A stretch of 63,254 nucleotides of DNA, the filler included, from Platydemus manokwari (taxonomy: Eukaryota), in the NCBI GenBank assembly GCA_037951405.1. It is 6 parts of 6 records of this genome, joined end to end, with 100 filler letters (N's around TTAATTAATTAA, not from the genome) between each part and the next. Parts side by side here need not be neighbours in the genome. Positions count along the whole stretch, not along the records: positions 43,419 to 53,421 come from JBBMOY011180100.1; 5 more parts are not named here. One strand, 5' to 3'. Under the pieces are notes generated by a model. It ran no database searches. It saw nothing but the letters and a program-made list of their open reading frames with translations, and was not told the origin of the DNA. Shown here one piece after another: positions 43,490 to 53,351 of the stretch (within the stretch, counting starts at the first letter, position 1; each line of letters opens with the position of its first letter). Position numbers and translations under genes: made by a program.

Positions 43490-43552
<63 letters not shown>

Positions 43553-43575
43553 GCACACAAGAATAATAATAATAA
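43243..43575. repeat. (TTA)n and (AAT)n microsatellites either side of a gap
   Basis: Triplet runs at ~43243-43318 and ~43492-43575. Confidence 0.9.
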
Positions 43576-44471
43576 TGTTACTAATTATCAATATTTTACC
43601 ATAAATAAATAAGTATTTAATTTCATATACTCATAATGATCCCAAAAGAATAACATGTATATATTTCTACAAGTAGAGAACTTCCTGTTAATTTGTGGAA
43701 TTTTCATTTTGATTTCATGAAATAACCTGAATTATCAAAATTGCAAAACTGGCCACCATTGTGTATATGAGCGTTAAAAATTAGAAATAATATTAATAAC
43801 TCTGAAGGTCATTTTTATAAATTAAACTATATCATTGTTATTGATTGTTATATTGATTAGTTAAAATTTCAAATTGCTTCTTTTATCTACTAAATTATCA
43901 ACTAAATGTCGAATAAACAATCAAATTTAGAAATGTGATTATTTGATTAATTCATACATTTCGATATTGTTATGGAAAAAAAGGAAAATGAAAGAAACTA
44001 TAATGGTGAAATGATTTAATTCTAATAAATATTTCAATTTTACTGGTCAAAATTACTCAGCGAATTAATTCCCAATGGAATTTCGATGTGATAAAATCTG
44101 CGATTATTAAAATAGATTTGGCATTTCATATTTTTAGAAACAATGCCAAACTGACGAGAATTTCTTTACCAAACTAATTGTGTCATTAGATTCGCAAAAG
44201 TTTATATTTTAGAAAAATAGGAATAAATTTAAAAGTGAGTAGCTTAGAAGATGATATTTTAATATAAACAAGTAATTCGTTTTTACTATTTCAATGGAAT
44301 AGATTTCTCTGATGAACAAAAGAATTTTTGATTTATCGACTCTTAGAAATCAGTGGAGAGCTAAAATTGATTTTAATTTCGCGAATAATCGTTCAACATT
44401 TGAAGATGTTTTTAATTAATGGATTAATATAAAAATTGAAAGCATTAAATAAACTATTTAAATTGACTTAC

Positions 44472-46040: not shown

Positions 46041-48465
46041 TGTGAGGTTTAAAATTAATAATTACGATTAATAATTTTAAAAAAATTTTTAATTGATTAT
46101 ATTAGAAATATTTAACACTTTGACTGACATTTGTGTCTATAACCGTCAAAACGAAATTCACTATGTGGCATGACAGCAATGCGGCTATAGCGGCACAAAT
46201 GTGCATTTACTGACGTACAAATAGAAGACTAGTGTCATGTTTTGGAAACAATTCTTTCGGTTGAATTTTGTTTCCACCTATTATACGACTTGTATCTTAA
46301 GTACGCACATATAGTGTTAAATTTCGAGCTTCATTTGTTCCTACTGTCCTTCAATGTGTTAATATTTGTATTTATCTTGATTAAGTCATTACTGCAACCT
46401 CTCAAAAATAATTCATAAAATTTAAAATAAAAATGTGCGAAAAAATAATGTTTATATTAATGGCAATTTAAAGAAGGCTAAAAATAATAGAATATTTGCT
46501 TGGAAAATATGTAATATAAAAATATTTTTTTGTGCTTTAATAATGAAGACTTTTGAATGCAACATAAAAAACGAAGAAGCGTTACCAACTAACGTGGCGA
46601 TCACGCACGTGGATGTGATCTTAGGTTCGCTGTTGCCAGACAGATTCAAAATGGGGATAACGTCGAACACTTTATTAAAAAGTGTAATCGATATTTCGAG
46701 GCTGGGGAAATCCCAAAGCGCGTCCAATTGGCTATCGTATTAGCACGATTGGACGACAAAATGAGGTACGAGGACAGACTGAGGAAGGCCTTTGGCCAAA
46801 AGAAATCCTTCGCTCAGGATGAGATGAAGGCCCTAAGGTTCAGAAGGAATGTCTCTCCCGATGATGTGGAGTTAGAGAAAGAAATTAAAATTAGGGATAT
46901 TGAGGAAGTGGATCAAAGAAAGGAAACCGTAAAAAAGATAGATGAAGTAGGAAATAAAGTAAAAAAAGTAAAGTAAAGTAAAGGTAGAGAATGGACCATG
47001 ATAGTCAGAGCAAAACCAAAACCCAGGTCTCTGGAAAGAAAGGTATATAATAGGACGTGCAATAGTTGCCAAAAACCAGGGGAAAAATGCCTGTCACCGA
47101 ATAGGTCACATGGCGAGAAATTGTACAAATGTCAAGTCTTGCAGATGTCGATACCGAGGACATCACGAGAGAGAATGTTACGCAAATTTAGAGAGAAGGG
47201 ACAACACAGGTCCAGCAACAAGCAAGGGATATCAATAATCACGAGAAGATTTGATCACAGACGGAGTACCAATAGAATAAAGGAAAACAGAAAGAGTTTC
47301 AACGGGCAAAATTATAAAATAGTGAAATAATAGACAAGTAGCGGCGTTTGAAGAAGAATCGGATTCAGAATACAACGAATAACACCCAAAAAAGAACGCG
47401 CCAACACCTGGCAATAAACTGAACAATAAATCTAAGTCTGAGCAAAATAACGAGAGTATAAGTAGTCATATTGATATTTATTATATAAGTAATTTAAATA
47501 AAATAAACAAAATAAAAACTAAAATAAGCAAACGAGACAGTGCCCAGAACAAAAAAATTGGAAAGTTGAAAAACAAATTGTAACCGGTAACAACTATGAT
47601 ATAGAATCAGAAAAGAGAGTACAATGGAAAGTTGTAAAATTTATAAAGAAAGGGATGGCTGACAATGTGGTGGAAGTACAAGGAGATGATACGGTAGTAA
47701 GTATATTAACGATCAAGGATTTAAAGCTTCCCCAGATTTCTTATGATAAAATGCAATGTAGACTGAGCATAAATATAAAAATAGAGAATAAAGAATTTGA
47801 ATGCTTGTTAGACACTGGCGCATGAGTAAATTTCATCGATAAGACGATATTAGAGACACTCAAATAAGTAGAAATCGAATATATAAGTGAAAGTTTACGA
47901 TGTGTCACCACAGTAGATTAGAGGTTGTTGGTAGGACAAGGATAAAAGTCAAGTTAGGAAGTCAGTCCGGGACGATATCATTCATAATAGTTGAGCACAT
48001 GAAACCAAAGATCATAGGCTGAATAGAGTTTCAAGAAGAATTTGGATTAGAGTTACGGTGGAAAAAGAACTCTCAGCACAAAGAAACAGAATTAAACACC
48101 TCCGTCTGTGAAATAACAGCGAGGTTTGGTAGGGGTATAATCGATGAGGATAGATTCAAGAAAACAAAATAATGTCTTGCGGTGAAAGAAGAATTTCGTT
48201 TATGGGGAATATTAAAAGCGAACAGTAACACATTCATGGCAGATCATTGGGACATTGATTGTACAAAGATAAGATTGTAACAAATGGAAGTCAAATAAAT
48301 ATCAAACCTCGGAGACAACCAGTAAATTTAGAATTTTTAGAATCCAAGTTAATTTGAATTTTAAAGAAGACTAAAAATAATAGAATATTTGTTTGGAAAA
48401 TTTGTAATATAAAAATATATTTTTTTGCGCTTTAATAATTATGACTTTTGAATCCAATAACTAAT
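46041..48465 (+). mobile_element. Ty3/gypsy retrotransposon, family B (5' LTR, PBS, gag, protease, deleted pol, partial 3' LTR)
   Basis: LTR 46041-46594, PBS-like TGGCGATCACG, zinc-knuckle-like CNSCQKPG, protease CLLDTGA (~47801-47822), pol-start IKPRRQPVNL; 48360-48455 repeats LTR sequence 46466-46560. Confidence 0.8.
46116..46316. mobile_element. Possible piggyBac-like MITE inserted in the LTR
   Basis: TTAA|CACT...AGTG|TTAA; the segment is absent from the homologous solo LTR at 41156; the TIR match is very short. Confidence 0.4.
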
Positions 48466-48715: not shown

Positions 48716-49020
48716 TATTAGGTTGTTGCATAAGTTCCCGCTGTTACATGAAATCATTTGCTCTATAAAGACTTTTTGATGTTTGGCGAAGTGTTACATG
48801 CCATTAGAAAGTCCGTGCTATGATCTACAAGATAAAGGTAATCGTTTCTGCATATATTATTTTTTTGTCTTTTTTAGAACCGTTAGAATAGATTGTCAAG
48901 TCGATAAAAAATCGCATTTTCGACATCTGCTTCTTTTTATCTTTAATCGAGGTCAAAAACGAATGAAGCTACCAGAGATATTTGTGCAATGTATGGAGAC
49001 GAGGCTATAGTTGAGAGAAC
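48716..49020 (+). mobile_element. mariner 5' fragment, same family as 25804-26582
   Basis: TIR TATTAGGTTGTTGCATAAGTTCCC and DCQVDKKSHFRHLLLFIFNRGQK. Confidence 0.8.
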
Positions 49021-49998
49021 TGAATTTTAAATGAATTTTAGCAAATATGATTAAAACATATTTTCTATGAAGGTGAGTTTTCAAGACTTAATTAGACTTA
49101 AAATTCATTCAAATAGTTTTAAAATATTTTTCAATGAGAGAGGAAACATTTTACAAAATCTATTTTTATTAACTAACATCAATGTTGATTGGTTAATTGG
49201 TTTCAAAATTATAATTTAAGTTTTGCATTTTCAATTTTTTTACTTGAACAATATAAAATAAATAATAAGATCAAAATATTATCTAAAATTTATAATTATA
49301 ATCGGTATAATTATAATTATGATAGTTCTAAATTGGAGATATAATGGTGGAAATATATTTTTAACATTGAAAACGAGGCGAAAAGTCACGGCACGAAAAT
49401 TATATTTAAGCAACAATTATTTAAAACATTGTTATATATGCTGAATATAACTAAATTGTACTGATTTGAAACAAAATGAAATAATAATGTCCATTTGAGC
49501 AAACCAATAAATCAAAAGCACAAATTCTATTTTAAAGAGTGGCCTAGTGCGAACTCACTTAAAATAATTCCAACATACTTGATATCAAATGAATTTAAAC
49601 AAAATATTTGTAAAATTTTATCTAATATTTATCAACCATTTAGACTAGTCGATAATATGTACTTTAGATAATAATTATAATTAATTATAATATAATAATT
49701 ATTATTTTTAAATAATTATCTGAATGAGCCACGATCACCCATCATAGTCGCAATTCAATCTATAATCCATAATGAATTCGATTCTTAAATTAAATATCTT
49801 TAAATTTTCAGACTCCGATGGGTTTTTTCCAGATGACAATAATGCCTCATAGTTTATTACCTGTCAGCTCTTTATAATTCCGTCGGGGTTTACATGACTT
49901 CTTTAATCACATCATAGTTATCCTGGATTTTGGATTACTTGATGAATTGGTCTCTGAATTAGTATAAAAACGAATATCTATTTTCTAAATTTCTTTTA

Positions 49999-50165
49999 GT
50001 CCTATCTGCATCTGGTCCGAGACACTGACGAGGCCTATGGAAGGACACTATCCGTATCATAAACATCCATTACCACCACCTCTCCTGAAGTTTCCAAAGA
50101 TATGTAAGTCCTATACATCTCTAGGTCGAGATACTGATTAGGGCTATGGAAGGCCGAAATAGGAC
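49999..50165 (+). ncRNA. Tandem pair of type III hammerhead-ribozyme-like motifs
   Basis: Copy 2 (50108-50165): GTCCTA-TA-C ATCTC taggtc GAGAT A-CTGATTA-GGGC tatggaa GGCC-GAAA-TAGGAC, with all three stems visible. Copy 1 (49999-50050), 109 nt upstream, has an intact CTGACGA-GGCC but lacks the GAAA box. Confidence 0.7.
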
Positions 50166-51309
50166 CAATTTTCAGAAAAAAGTAATTTTTAGAATATTTT
50201 GACTACTTAACAAAATTAATATTTTATAAAAATTCTATTTTAAAATATTCCAAATATAATTCATTTTCAAATCCTCACATTATTAATTAATGTAATAATT
50301 ATAATCATTATAATAATTAATGTAATAATTATAATATCTAAAGTCTAAAAATATTCTTAAAAGTTCTTGAGGATTCAATTAAGATATGAAGAAATGATGT
50401 CTCAATTAATTTTAATTTATTAAATGAAATTTATATGAGATTATAACAAAAAAAAATTCGTTTCAAAAATCAATTTACACTTTAAAACCAACTAAAATCA
50501 TATCAAAAATCCTTTGATCTTCGGGCTTTGATTTATGTTAAATTTAATTTAAATGAAACTCAAACGTTGGTGATATAAACAAGAATAACACTCGATATCG
50601 ATTATTATTAAGCATAAAATTATTGAATGAAAACTTATTATTTTAGATTGATTATTTTAAGATTTTTGTTGAGAAATAAGATTTCAGAGTAGTATTAGAT
50701 TTTTATTTAAAAAATTATTATGAATGAAAAATATTATTATCCACGAAATCATAAGACATTTAAAATTAGTTAAAACAAATTTCTACAAACACTTTAGAAT
50801 CAATTTTTGTGTTGAAGTCAGGCAGATTGTGTGAGCGCCTTGATAACACGTGAATGGAAAATTATGAATTTATGATTCAAAATATTTTCTGTGTATTTGA
50901 TTACATTGGTCATTTATTAAATTATCAGTTCTATTTTGACATTTCGATATTAAATTTCTATAGATTTCACAATCAAGCAACTGTTCACTTCAGAACGGTT
51001 CGTTTTTAATCGCAAAATTCTAAAGATGTCACAATCAAGCAATACGATAATTGTTTCATGAATAGTTGAAACAAATGTTTAATCCTTCGATGACATTAAT
51101 TTCAAAAACATTTTTCCATAGTAAAAGAAAATATTAATAAACAGGTTTTTCTTTAGATTTGCCAAATATTTTACAGTTTTGATTTACAGTTGAGATGTAA
51201 TCCACTGATTTTATTACAAGAAATACGGTTTAAGGAATGATTGTTTCATAATTTATTGAATGTAACATAAACAATAAGGTTGTGTTATCACTTTGGAAAA
51301 ACAAAATGA

Positions 51310-53351
51310 TAAATTCGTAGAGAAAGCTATGTTCAAGCTCTAAAAACGGAAAGAAACAACCGGTGAAATAACCAGTTTAAAAAAGAAAGCAACGAGTCCA
51401 GTGGTTATAAACCACCCCATTCTATCAGAACACGGAACCCCGAGCCAATAGCTTCAGAACAGAAGTTCGCTTCAGGTAGAGATGGAGATGAAATACATGG
51501 TCAGAAAACTTTACGATAAGTGCCGAGGCATGCCATATCCAAAAGGAGAACACTTGTGAGGAGAAAGTGGACACTACAGACGTCAGTGTACCTAAGGCGC
51601 AAATGTTTAATATGCGGACAAGGGGGCCATCATTTCAGATTGTTCCATGTAATACAAGGTACAAGGCACAAAGCAGAAGGTAAAAATTTATGTGTTTAGG
51701 ACGAAATCGAGGAACAATTTGATCCAATCGAGACCCAATAATGCACAAGGTAGAAGACCAAAAAACATCAGCAACTCCGTTTCGTTGGCCACATGTTCAG
51801 TGCCAAGGGCATAAAGACTAATTGCTACAAAATCGAACAGATACGAGTTGTCCCATTACCACAATATACTAGCAAACTGCGTTTCGATTTAAGATACAGA
51901 AAAGCAAAGAATCATAGCAACGCAGATGGATTATCTAGGATCAACGAGACACTATGTTCCCAGTGCAAGACGAGACACGATGAAGCAAATACCGAAAAGC
52001 CTAAAACCAAATATTTAGCCCAAATAAAAGTAAAATCGGAGATAATGCAAAAAATACAAGAAGCACAGTATGAAGATGCAGAAATATGGAGACATTCAGA
52101 TTTCTAAATGGCGAAATAACTCTAACTAGCGCGGAATTCTGGAATAAACATTCACTTTCGAGAATTAAAGGTAAGCTGAAGGTGGTCGATAATACGTTGA
52201 TGATGAAGAAATATGAGGATTTGGTTGCTATAATACCAAAAAATTTTGCCTCTAAATTTGTCAAGATAACTCACGAAGAACTCTGCCACTTAGGCTCAAA
52301 GAAAACCTTCGCTTATTTTAACGACAGTTTTATTTGCCCGACATGTTCAACACCATCAAAGTGATACTGAAAGAATGAATTTTCTGTGCAAAGAGAAAGA
52401 TTGATCAATTCAGAACTGAGGAGGTTCAGCTCTCTCGGTTAGACTCTGAGTTTCAAGAGCAAATCGTTGTTGACATTGCTCAAATGGACACGATGCATAG
52501 TAACAAGAAGTATCTAGTAGTCATTATCGACAGATTGAACAAGCTGGTAATCCTCACCGCTACATCTAAGTAGGACGAAAAGACAATTTTCCAGGTCATC
52601 TTGAATTCGTGGATTTATGGTTTTGGAAAGCCAAAGAGCATTCTATCTGATAACGGGTAGTAATTTGGATGCAAATTTATGAGGCGTATTTAAAATTGAA
52701 AATCAAACAAGAATTCAGCTCACCACACCAGCATCAATCGAAAGGGTTAGCGAAAAAAGTCATCAGGACTATACGAGTTATGATAACAGTTACCTTAAAG
52801 GATAAGAGCTCCGACAAATCTTGGGCTGAATTGTTGCCAGGAATAGAGTTCTGCGTCAACGCAACACATCAATCAACAACAAAGTTCTCGCCTTTTGAGG
52901 TAATCTATAGGTGGAAGATCAATGTTCATACGGATGTAAGTCACAGGAACCAAACTCGAGATGATATTACAGCAGCAGCTAGAGAAAATTCTAAAATGAC
53001 AGCCAACATGATGTCTAACCGAGAGAGGGGAAGAAGAACACATCGACTTTTTCATGTTTGAAAGAAGGTGCTAGTTTACGTAGATCCCCACAAGAGGAAG
53101 AAGAATGGATACCAAGACGAGGTCCCTTACCAAATTACCGGATTCAAGTCACACTGGCAAGTGGATATTCAATTCCCTCATGCGATAAAATACAGACAAT
53201 TAGAGTGGCTGAAATGATAAAACGGGCCTTAAGAGGAAGCGAGTAACGTGGTTCAATAAACAAACACGTTGTATTTATTTACATAATTGATTGGCGGAAT
53301 AATTCAGTTTTTTAAATAAATATTATATCTGAAAGTGTCAATGACGTAACT
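51310..53351 (+). mobile_element. Ty3/gypsy retrotransposon, family A copy 2 (gag part, deleted RT/RNase H, integrase, PPT, 3' LTR)
   Basis: YRKAKNHSNADGLSR; integrase THEELCHLG, VVIIDRL, KPKSILSDNG, FSSPHQHQSKG, NATHQSTTKFSPFE; PPT AAGAGGAAGCG then LTR 53242-53351, homologous to 19807-19894. Confidence 0.88.

What the first reader, a model, noticed from the sequence alone, without database searches (positions are those of the whole stretch)
49999..50165. Tandem type III hammerhead ribozyme pair with complementary defects
Seen: two copies 109 nt apart of GTCCTA-TH-[stem I]-CTGANGA-GGCC-TATGGAA-GGCC-GAAA-TAGGAC. Copy 1 keeps the AUC site, CTGACGA and GGCC but has lost GAAA and the stem III 3' strand. 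Copy 2 keeps GGCC-GAAA-TAGGAC but has CTGATTA (G8 changed) and a stem II mismatch. Known: tandem hammerheads mark retrozymes and Penelope-like element ends, and those described in animals are mostly type I. Inference: this is a small retrozyme-like family with type III topology. The 5' half of copy 1 and the 3' half of copy 2 could fold one complete core with a ~115-nt loop II, cleaving after C50006. No Penelope RT was seen nearby.
Basis: partly seen in the sequence, partly recalled or inferred. Interest (0 to 1): 0.8.

Follow-up and report, generated by a model that had tools for sequence, protein, structure and literature searches.

The report
Decayed copies of hammerhead ribozyme repeat
Two neighbouring, individually broken copies of a repeat that is present in hundreds of contigs of the same organism and whose usual form carries a textbook type III hammerhead self-cleaving RNA motif; the pair itself is most likely dead, but the family is worth a look because such type III families are described mainly from plants and this genome looks like an animal's.

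Summary

The hammerhead likeness is ancestry, not chance. At 80% likeness, 913 contigs of the one public run that holds this locus lie on the region. Inside the motif the listed table shows six places where most of them differ from the window. Four restore a core base or a stem pair: G8 at 50139, stem II at 50143, and two stem I pairs at 50009 and 50010. The other two are neutral. Another 27 contigs carry, behind 50044, the ten letters with GAAA and the stem III strand that copy 1 lacks. The usual form is therefore a canonical type III hammerhead.

- **Tandem pair:** the 109-nt arrangement belongs to this locus alone, because the spacer has the depth of a single contig.
- **Rfam:** it finds nothing in the window, but it gives a textbook control only 27 bits.
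- **Composite fold:** it is possible (0.4% of the ensemble) but unsupported.
- **Retrozyme features:** I found no LTR pair, no tRNA-Met primer site and no RNA data. Element ends and mobility mechanism stay open.
- **Host:** a mariner remnant suggests an animal, where type III families are barely described.

Verdict: decayed members of a real hammerhead-bearing repeat family.

The parts
49999..50046 (+). Copy 1. It holds the 5' strand of stem III with the AUC site (cleavage would be after C50006), stem I with two inner mismatches (C50009/A50022 and A50010/G50021), the core CUGACGA, and the 5' strand and loop of stem II. It lacks ten letters (CCGAAATAGG) that other genomic copies carry behind 50044, so G12-A13-A14 and the 3' strand of stem III are gone.
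   Evidence: Sequence. Loose-end consensus behind 50044 in 27 contigs, and a 703-nt contig laid on 49914-50063 with 9 gap letters. AGG stands both before the missing stretch and at its end, which fits loss by slippage (read from the sequence).
50108..50165 (+). Copy 2, a full-length type III hammerhead-like motif with private defects. G8 is changed to U (50139). There is a G/G mismatch in stem II (50143/50153) and a C/A mismatch at the first pair of stem I (50116/50133). Cleavage would be after A50115.
   Evidence: The MFE fold is the three-way junction. Most contigs carry G at 50139 (depth 1050 of 1125) and C at 50143 (1066 of 1193). It is the only hit of the relaxed descriptor in the piece. 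Relative to the majority, A50117-U50132 replaces a G-C pair of stem I, a change on both sides.
49914..49998 (+). Non-coding part upstream of the motif. It is shared with the most abundant part of the repeat family.
   Evidence: Summed contig depth is 2400-9600 here, against 12-17 for single-copy DNA. Fifty contigs run on upstream of 49914 with a common sequence that resembles the window's 49884-49913.
49700..49913 (+). Further upstream part, shared with fewer contigs (depth 60-270). It may hold an older, very decayed unit. The 5' end of the element was not reached, because my stretch began at 49700.
   Evidence: a 1465-nt contig lies on 49703-49891 at 80% likeness, and joints skip 118-173 nt between 49746-49783 and 49902-49932. 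The local alignment of 49720-49845 to 49846-49998 is not above shuffles (z 1.5).
50047..50063 (+). Tail behind the motif of copy 1 (ACTATCCGTATCATAAA), shared with the family.
   Evidence: The loose-end consensus reads on as ACACTATCCGTATCATAAAA, and the laid pieces end at 50063.
50064..50090 (.). Spacer peculiar to this locus.
   Evidence: Depth is 15-17, that of one contig.
50091..50107 (+). Short stretch before copy 2 that repeats 49982-49998. Copy 2 is thus a 5'-truncated family copy of about 75 nt.
   Evidence: About ten contigs also share 25 nt or more of what follows copy 2, so there is a second variant of the 3' flank (depth at 50176-50187).

Best explanation
The locus holds two decayed members of a high-copy, non-coding interspersed repeat family. 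In its usual form the family carries a canonical type III hammerhead ribozyme:
- stem III of 7 bp, open;
- cleavage site AUC;
- stem I of 6 bp with a 6-nt loop;
- core CUGAUGA;
- stem II GGCC/GGCC with a 7-nt loop;
- GAAA.

Transcripts of intact copies would cut themselves after C17, leaving a 2',3'-cyclic phosphate and a 5'-hydroxyl. The most likely use is processing of the element's own RNA, as in retrozymes and other ribozyme-bearing retroelements. Both the cutting and that use are inferred, not shown.

In the window both copies are dead on their own:
- Copy 1 lost ten letters that include G12-A13-A14 and most of the 3' strand of stem III. It also has two mismatches in stem I.
- Copy 2 is a 5'-truncated copy. 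It has G8 changed to U and mismatches in stem II and in the first pair of stem I.

Their closeness comes from a local event, either a partial duplication or the landing of a truncated copy next to an older one. It is not the family's repeat unit.
For: -: 913 contigs of the run that holds the locus lie on 49700-50400 at 80% likeness or more. By likeness they split into 17 at 99% or more, 55 at 95-99%, 260 at 90-95% and 581 under 90%.
- The six places inside the motif that the table lists (42 further differences over the whole stretch are not shown) all have majority letters that complete or spare the hammerhead: 50009 C>T and 50010 A>C (two stem I pairs), 50139 T>G (G8), 50143 G>C (a stem II pair), 50022 A>G (U-A becomes U-G) and 50029 C>T (the free position N7).
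- 27 contigs carry CCGAAATAGGAC behind 50044.
- The spacer has single-contig depth.
- the 58-nt motif with those letters has all conserved core bases. Its hammerhead helices come to -21.1 kcal/mol, against an MFE of -21.8, and hold 12% of the ensemble.
- the MFE fold of copy 2 is the type III junction.
- Stem and loop sizes match what PMC7936874 gives as typical for type III (helix I of 6 bp with a 6-8 nt loop, helix II of 4 bp), apart from a longer loop 2.
- G8 and G12-A13-A14 are needed for catalysis. This rests on established hammerhead biochemistry, not on a test here.
Against: - No covariance-model hit in the window.
- No single intact genomic copy was displayed. Intactness is inferred from majority shares of 89-95% at each place, and several contigs shown at joints are themselves decayed (one has the core CCGACGA).
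- High conservation may reflect recent spread from one master copy rather than selection on the fold.
- No RNA evidence.
- Element ends, target-site duplications and the source of reverse transcriptase are unknown.
- The window copy of the element shows no excess secondary structure (z +1.15 and +0.35), unlike the retrozyme RNAs described so far.
Confidence: 0.75

Rival explanations
1. The pair works together as one discontinuous ribozyme. The 5' half of copy 1 and the 3' half of copy 2 form a complete core with a loop II of about 116 nt, and cut after C50006.
For: All conserved bases are present in the composite: CUGACGA from copy 1; GAAA and the 3' strand of stem III from copy 2; GGCC 50032-50035 pairs with GGCC 50152-50155. 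The best structure that contains it is -33.5 kcal/mol, against an MFE of -35.6. A discontinuous type III hammerhead with a very large insertion is known in mammalian Clec2 genes (PMC6155905).
Against: It holds only about 0.4% of the ensemble. Stem I of copy 1 has two adjacent inner mismatches, leaving 2+2 pairs. Copy 2's own 5' strand competes for the same 3' strand and lies nearer. The arrangement occurs at this locus only, so nothing has selected for it. Whether the locus is transcribed is unknown.
Confidence: 0.05
2. The region is a solo LTR, or a piece of one, of an LTR-type retrozyme as in plants. In that case the hammerhead lies inside a 300-400 bp terminal repeat of a non-autonomous Ty3/gypsy-dependent element.
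For: Plant genomic type III hammerheads mostly occur as isolated motifs inside family-specific stretches of 300-400 bp (PMC4918200). Here the family sequence runs for at least 300 nt upstream of the motif. Decayed Ty3/gypsy-like genes lie on both sides in the piece.
Against: - No second LTR or any long direct repeat in the piece.
- No tRNA-Met primer site near the motif.
- G+C is 34-38%, against more than 55% reported for plant retrozymes (PMC7229834).
- Only about 17 nt of family sequence follow the motif.
- A Mos1-type mariner remnant suggests an animal genome.
- The flanking retrotransposon pieces share no DNA with the region.
Confidence: 0.12
3. The likeness is chance: an ordinary local duplication in A+T-rich DNA, or a coding exon with a decayed duplicate. 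Copy 1 sits between ...TTTTAG and GTAAGT and lies in a 50-codon open frame.
For: No Rfam hit. Copy 1 is flanked by splice-site-like letters and lies in the open frame 49989-50138. Relaxed hammerhead look-alikes arise about once per 6 Mb of random sequence.
Against: The sequence is a repeat found in hundreds of contigs, and its majority letters perfect the hammerhead at every differing place listed. Chance does not predict that. The open frame has no Pfam match. Copy 2 has stops in all three + frames (read).
Confidence: 0.03

Closest known systems
Plant LTR retrozymes (Cervera, Urbina and de la Pena 2016, PMC4918200)
   Same: Type III hammerhead of the classic build (helix I of 6 bp with a 6-nt loop, helix II of 4 bp). 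Non-coding and multi-copy. The motif is often found singly inside a few hundred bp of family-specific sequence.
   Different: No LTR pair, primer site or polypurine tract was seen. G+C is about 35% rather than above 55%. The spacing of the two motifs is 109 nt rather than 600-1000. The host is probably an animal. No excess RNA structure in the window copy.
Animal non-LTR retrozymes and hammerhead satellites (Cervera and de la Pena 2020, PMC7229834; bioRxiv 10.64898/2026.07.22.740005)
   Same: Low G+C, short non-coding repeats, many decayed and monomeric copies, and probably an animal host.
   Different: Those carry type I hammerheads (helix I open, weak helix III), lie in tandem arrays with the motif in every unit, and go with Penelope-like elements. 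Here the motif is type III, the tandem is local only, and no Penelope-type gene is in the piece.
Type III hammerheads noted in insect genomes (PMC7936874; PMC7761336, 'in preparation')
   Same: Genomic type III motifs in animals. Elements with type III hammerheads in insects are mentioned as a possible source of plant retrozymes.
   Different: The published ones are atypical: long helix I with an internal loop and an extra hairpin, found as isolated motifs in termites and dipterans. This family has the classic short build and is high-copy. Whether the host is an insect is unknown.
Rfam RF00008 Hammerhead_3
   Same: With the family's majority letters the motif has the same core bases and helix order.
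   Different: Neither window copy reaches even E = 10. A canonical control reaches 27.4 bits, against a gathering score of 48.5.

Membership tests
Hammerhead ribozyme, type III | Core C3-U4-G5-A6-N7-G8-A9 | tested here: inconclusive
   Copy 1 has CUGACGA (met). Copy 2 has CUGAUUA, with G8 changed (not met). Most genomic copies have G at 50139.
Hammerhead ribozyme, type III | G12-A13-A14, then A15.1 paired with U16.1, and H17 at the cleavage site | tested here: inconclusive
   Copy 1: GAAA is absent because of a 10-letter loss (not met). Copy 2: GAAA at 50156-50159, the pair U50114-A50159, and H17 = A50115 (met). 27 contigs carry CCGAAATAGGAC behind 50044.
Hammerhead ribozyme, type III | Three helices around the core, with I and II closed by loops and III open | tested here: met
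   Copy 2 folds this way as its MFE structure. The motif with majority letters has helices of 7, 6 and 4-5 bp at -21.1 kcal/mol, against an MFE of -21.8. Copy 1 cannot form helix III.
Hammerhead ribozyme, type III | Covariance-model score at or above Rfam's gathering score (48.5 bits) | tested here: not met
   No hit at E up to 10 on stretches of 10 kb, 271 nt and 73 nt. The control L030 882-940 scores 27.4 bits, so the criterion is strict.
Hammerhead ribozyme, type III | Self-cleavage at the predicted site | not testable with these tools
   This needs transcription in vitro or mapping of RNA ends. No RNA run is on record.
LTR retrozyme | Two LTRs of 300-400 bp, each with a hammerhead, 600-1000 nt apart | tested here: not met
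   The only direct repeat is the 66-nt pair at spacing 109.
LTR retrozyme | tRNA-Met primer binding site and polypurine tract next to the LTRs, with 4-bp target duplications | tested here: not met
   TGGTATCAGAGC with up to 2 mismatches matches once only, at 52227 on the - strand inside an integrase remnant, which is chance level. Target duplications could not be judged, because the element's ends are unknown.
Non-LTR (animal) retrozyme | Type I hammerhead in every unit of a tandem array | tested here: not met
   The topology is type III. The spacer of the pair is single-copy.
Non-LTR (animal) retrozyme | Unit-length circular RNA | not testable with these tools
   No RNA run holds the stretch.
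Non-LTR (animal) retrozyme | Link to Penelope-like elements (RT with GIY-YIG endonuclease) | tested here: not met
   The open frames I scanned in the piece gave only weak Pfam matches, to retroviral protease and to the integrase zinc domain, plus a mariner HTH. Ten kb is a small sample.

The most novel reading that the evidence does not exclude
An animal genome, probably an invertebrate's, hosts a high-copy, mobile, retrozyme-like family built around a classic plant- or viroid-style type III hammerhead. It has none of the LTR-retrozyme features seen in plants and is not the type I kind known from animals. This would be a third kind of hammerhead retroelement, or the insect-side counterpart that de la Pena and colleagues invoked (PMC7761336) when they proposed horizontal transfer as the origin of plant retrozymes.
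Probability: 0.3. Interest if true: 0.7.

Novelty: new variant of a known kind. Interest (0 to 1): 0.5.

Why it matters
The held literature describes type III hammerheads in eukaryotic genomes almost only from plants, as LTR retrozymes. Animals are said to carry type I motifs. Type III elements in insects are mentioned only as 'in preparation', and the published insect motifs are atypical and isolated (PMC7761336, PMC7936874).

A high-copy family with the classic type III build in an animal would:
- widen the known range of ribozyme-bearing mobile elements;
- give a concrete candidate for the proposed link between animal and plant retrozymes;
- give a new natural set of variants for studying hammerhead sequence constraints.

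The two copies in the window are only fossils. Their value is as a pointer to the family.

Tried and rejected
- **Rfam at E up to 10** on 10 kb, 271 nt and 73 nt: no hammerhead. A control showed that the model is strict and the filters lossy.
- **Pattern scans of public collections.** The stem II block gave one viral contig and 27 prokaryotic contigs. None has GAAA or stems in place, and the count is in the chance range. The block plus GAAA gave nothing in the metagenomes. A helix III plus core pattern gave two G+C-rich metagenome contigs with true but unrelated intergenic type III hammerheads and nothing in the viral contigs.
- **Fishing for other family copies through translated frames.** The query was too short, and then no shared words were found.
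- **Exact look-up of a window ORF:** not on record.
- **Naming the organism.** Two Atlas searches gave mixed plant, fungal and animal taxa at weak scores. The exhaustive protein search found Ty3/gypsy-type pol relatives, but without names or organisms.
- **Exon reading of copy 1:** rejected.
- **tRNA-derived SINE:** no tRNA found. Several TTTT runs in 49914-49998 speak against pol III (read from the sequence).
- **Direct repeats around the region** (49519-49583 against 50227-50264): the alignment is barely above shuffles in A+T-rich DNA (z 2.5).
- **An older unit at 49720-49845:** suggestive by eye, but not significant.
- **The 2010 paper** cited for type III motifs in insects (PMC2941103) is not held.

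Full report
**What is there.**

- Copy 1 (49999-50046) runs GTCCTATC, an 18-nt stem I hairpin, CTGACGA, GGCC, TATGGAA, GG, and then goes straight on with ACACTATCC. GAAA and the 3' strand of stem III are missing.
- Copy 2 (50108-50165) runs GTCCTATA, ATCTC-TAGGTC-GAGAT, CTGATTA, GGGC-TATGGAA-GGCC, GAAA, TAGGAC.

The repeat finder gives a 63-nt direct repeat (49982-50044 and 50091-50153), 71% identical without gaps, at a spacing of 109. MAFFT gives 76%. The likeness starts 17 nt before the motif and fades right after GGAAGG.

Copy 2 folds, as its minimum-free-energy structure, into the type III hammerhead junction. Stem III has 7 bp and stem I 5 bp. Stem II has 4 bp in a register shifted by one base from the canonical one, which has the G/G mismatch. 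Copy 1 does not fold this way.

**Is it more than chance?** Taken alone, only just.
- A relaxed type III descriptor finds only copy 2 in the 10-kb piece, and one hit in 6 Mb of random sequence of the same dinucleotide make-up. It allows at most one core change and asks for stem III of at least 6 of 7 pairs, stem I of at least 5 and stem II of at least 3 of 4. That is rare for 10 kb, but common over a scan of gigabases.
- Rfam gives no hammerhead hit at E up to 10 on 10 kb, 271 nt or 73 nt.
- I checked how much that silence means. A pattern scan turned up two metagenome contigs with textbook intergenic type III hammerheads (L029, L030). Rfam missed both in a 7-kb search. On a 141-nt stretch it scored L030 at only 27.4 bits, against a gathering score of 48.5.
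- So the Rfam model is strict. A copy with a changed G8 and two stem mismatches is expected to fall below view.

**The decisive evidence: other copies in the same organism.** One public run holds this locus (73% of its sampled words, kept as contigs, organism coded). I laid its contigs on 49700-50400 at 80% likeness, and 913 contigs lie on it. By likeness they split into 17 at 99% or more, 55 at 95-99%, 260 at 90-95% and 581 under 90%.

Summed depth is 2400-9600 over 49916-50035 and about 1200 over 50132-50155. Single-copy stretches have 12-17. The tool warns that these sums are not copy numbers.

Inside the motif the table lists six places where most contigs differ from the window (42 further differences over the whole stretch are not shown):

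| Place | Change | Depth share | Effect on the hammerhead |
|---|---|---|---|
| 50009 | C>T | 4365 of 4622 | closes one of the two inner mismatches of copy 1's stem I |
| 50010 | A>C | 4345 of 4622 | closes the other |
| 50022 | A>G | 1055 of 1614 | turns the new U-A pair into U-G (neutral) |
| 50029 | C>T | 965 of 1060 | the unconstrained N7 (neutral) |
| 50139 | T>G | 1050 of 1125 | restores G8 in copy 2 |
| 50143 | G>C | 1066 of 1193 | restores the stem II pair in copy 2 |

None of the six harms the motif.

In addition, 27 contigs that end their fit at 50044 read on with CCGAAATAGGACACTATCCGTATCATAAAA. Copy 1 has therefore lost the ten letters CCGAAATAGG. AGG stands both before the gap and at the end of the lost stretch, which fits slippage. 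A 703-nt contig lies across 49914-50063 with nine extra letters.

**The usual form.** It is:
- GUCCUAUC, with cleavage after that C;
- stem I UGUCUC/GAGGCA with loop UGGUCC;
- CUGAUGA;
- stem II GGCC/GGCC with loop UAUGGAA;
- GAAA;
- UAGGAC.

Every conserved core base is present. Its hammerhead helices come to -21.1 kcal/mol, against an MFE of -21.8, and hold 12% of the ensemble.

The stem and loop sizes match what PMC7936874 gives as typical of type III motifs of plant retrozymes and subviral RNAs (helix I of 6 bp with a 6-8 nt loop, helix II of 4 bp). The exception is a longer loop 2.

Relative to this form, copy 2 has A-U where the majority has G-C in stem I (50117/50132), a change on both sides that keeps the pair.

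Caveats:
- The tool showed no single intact copy end to end. Intactness is inferred from majority shares.
- Several contigs shown at joints are themselves decayed.
- I assembled only this 58-nt motif from letters the tool reported. I built no consensus of the element.

**What the pair is.**
- The spacer 50064-50107 has the depth of one contig, so the 109-nt tandem belongs to this locus only.
- The listed 'joints' that skip 113-137 nt from copy 1 to copy 2 fit best as single hammerheads elsewhere in the genome. Their 5' part fits copy 1 and their 3' part fits copy 2.
- Copy 2 is a 5'-truncated copy of about 75 nt.
- About ten contigs share what follows copy 2, so the family has at least two variants of 3' flank.
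- Upstream, fifty contigs continue beyond 49914 with a shared sequence that resembles the window's own. A 1465-nt contig lies on 49703-49891. The element therefore runs at least 300 nt upstream of the motif, but only about 17 nt downstream.
- Its ends were not reached.

**State of the two copies.** By established hammerhead biochemistry, both are dead on their own. G8 and G12-A13-A14 are essential.

The best structure that contains it is -33.5 kcal/mol, against -35.6 for the MFE. It holds about 0.4% of the ensemble and rests on a stem I of 2+2 pairs. I cannot exclude it, and nothing supports it.

**What kind of element?** The tests for known kinds mostly fail.
- No long direct repeat or LTR pair in the piece, and no DNA likeness to the decayed Ty3/gypsy-like genes on either side (46593-48300 and 51340-53250).
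- No tRNA-Met primer site and no tRNA.
- No excess RNA structure of 49914-50063 or 49721-50063 (z +1.15 and +0.35).
- G+C of 34-38%, against more than 55% in plant retrozymes (PMC7229834).
- The motif is type III, not the type I of animal non-LTR retrozymes (PMC7229834; bioRxiv 10.64898/2026.07.22.740005).
- No RNA run holds the stretch.

The mechanism I commit to is self-cleavage of the element's transcripts at C17, serving RNA processing for retro-mobility in the retrozyme manner. It is an inference from the family's build and copy number, not a result.

**Host.** The organism is coded. A mariner remnant lies at 48720-49030.
- It has an inverted-repeat end, TTAGGTTGTTGCATAAGT, which resembles the animal cecropia/Hsmar1 type. 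That comparison is from memory.
- Read through one frameshift with X, it has a Mos1-type helix-turn-helix (Pfam HTH_48, E 9e-12, 45.4 bits).

This points to an animal. Protein-based attempts to name the taxon gave mixed or nameless results.

**Comparison with the literature.** Type III genomic hammerheads are described from plants, as LTR retrozymes (PMC4918200). Animals 'mostly show type I' (PMC7229834). Type III motifs in termite and dipteran genomes are atypical and isolated (PMC7936874). 'Elements with type III HHRs' in insects are only mentioned as work in preparation (PMC7761336).

Full-text searches found no description of a high-copy classic type III family in an animal. The 2010 paper that may bear on this is not held.

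**Verdict.** The family is real and of type III. The tandem pair is a local accident of two fossils. I rate it a new variant of a known kind, with moderate interest that depends on the host being an animal and on a census of the assembly.

Noticed in passing
window 48720-49030 (+): Remnant of a Mos1-type mariner transposon. It has the terminal repeat TTAGGTTGTTGCATAAGTTCC and a frameshifted N-terminal helix-turn-helix (Pfam HTH_48, E 9e-12 when read through the break with X). It is cut off after about 300 nt.
   Followed up: partly
window 46593-48300 (+) and 51340-53250 (+): Two decayed pieces of LTR retrotransposons that are not alike at the DNA level. The first has a gag zinc knuckle and the protease motif LLDTGA. 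The second has a gag knuckle joined almost directly to the end of RT/RNase H (NADGLSRI), then the integrase zinc domain and core. Pfam matches are weak. The integrase piece has 372 relatives at E up to 0.001, the best 53% identical. I only described these.
   Followed up: partly
window 50204-50347: A second repeated, very A+T-rich stretch, with summed contig depth of 440-3700 and its own loose-end consensus on both sides. Whether it belongs to the hammerhead element or is a separate repeat is not known.
   Followed up: no
L029 2009-2067 (-) and L030 882-940 (-): Two G+C-rich metagenome contigs carry canonical type III hammerheads. Each lies between a stop codon followed by a hairpin and the next ATG, as in phage-type intergenic hammerheads. 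Stem II differs between the two by compensatory changes (GGCCC/GGGCC against GGUCC/GGACC). Fold z-scores are -3.8 and -4.6. Rfam scores L030 at 27.4 bits, below its gathering score.
   Followed up: partly
window 43492-43576: (TAA)28 microsatellite. The whole piece has 30% G+C.
   Followed up: no
window 49741-49749, 49846-49853, 49911-49919, 50055-50061: The short word CATCATAG(T), or close variants of it, recurs four times around the hammerhead region. Some contigs join 49746 to 49916. This hints at old internal duplications of 105-170 nt. The alignments are not significant.
   Followed up: partly
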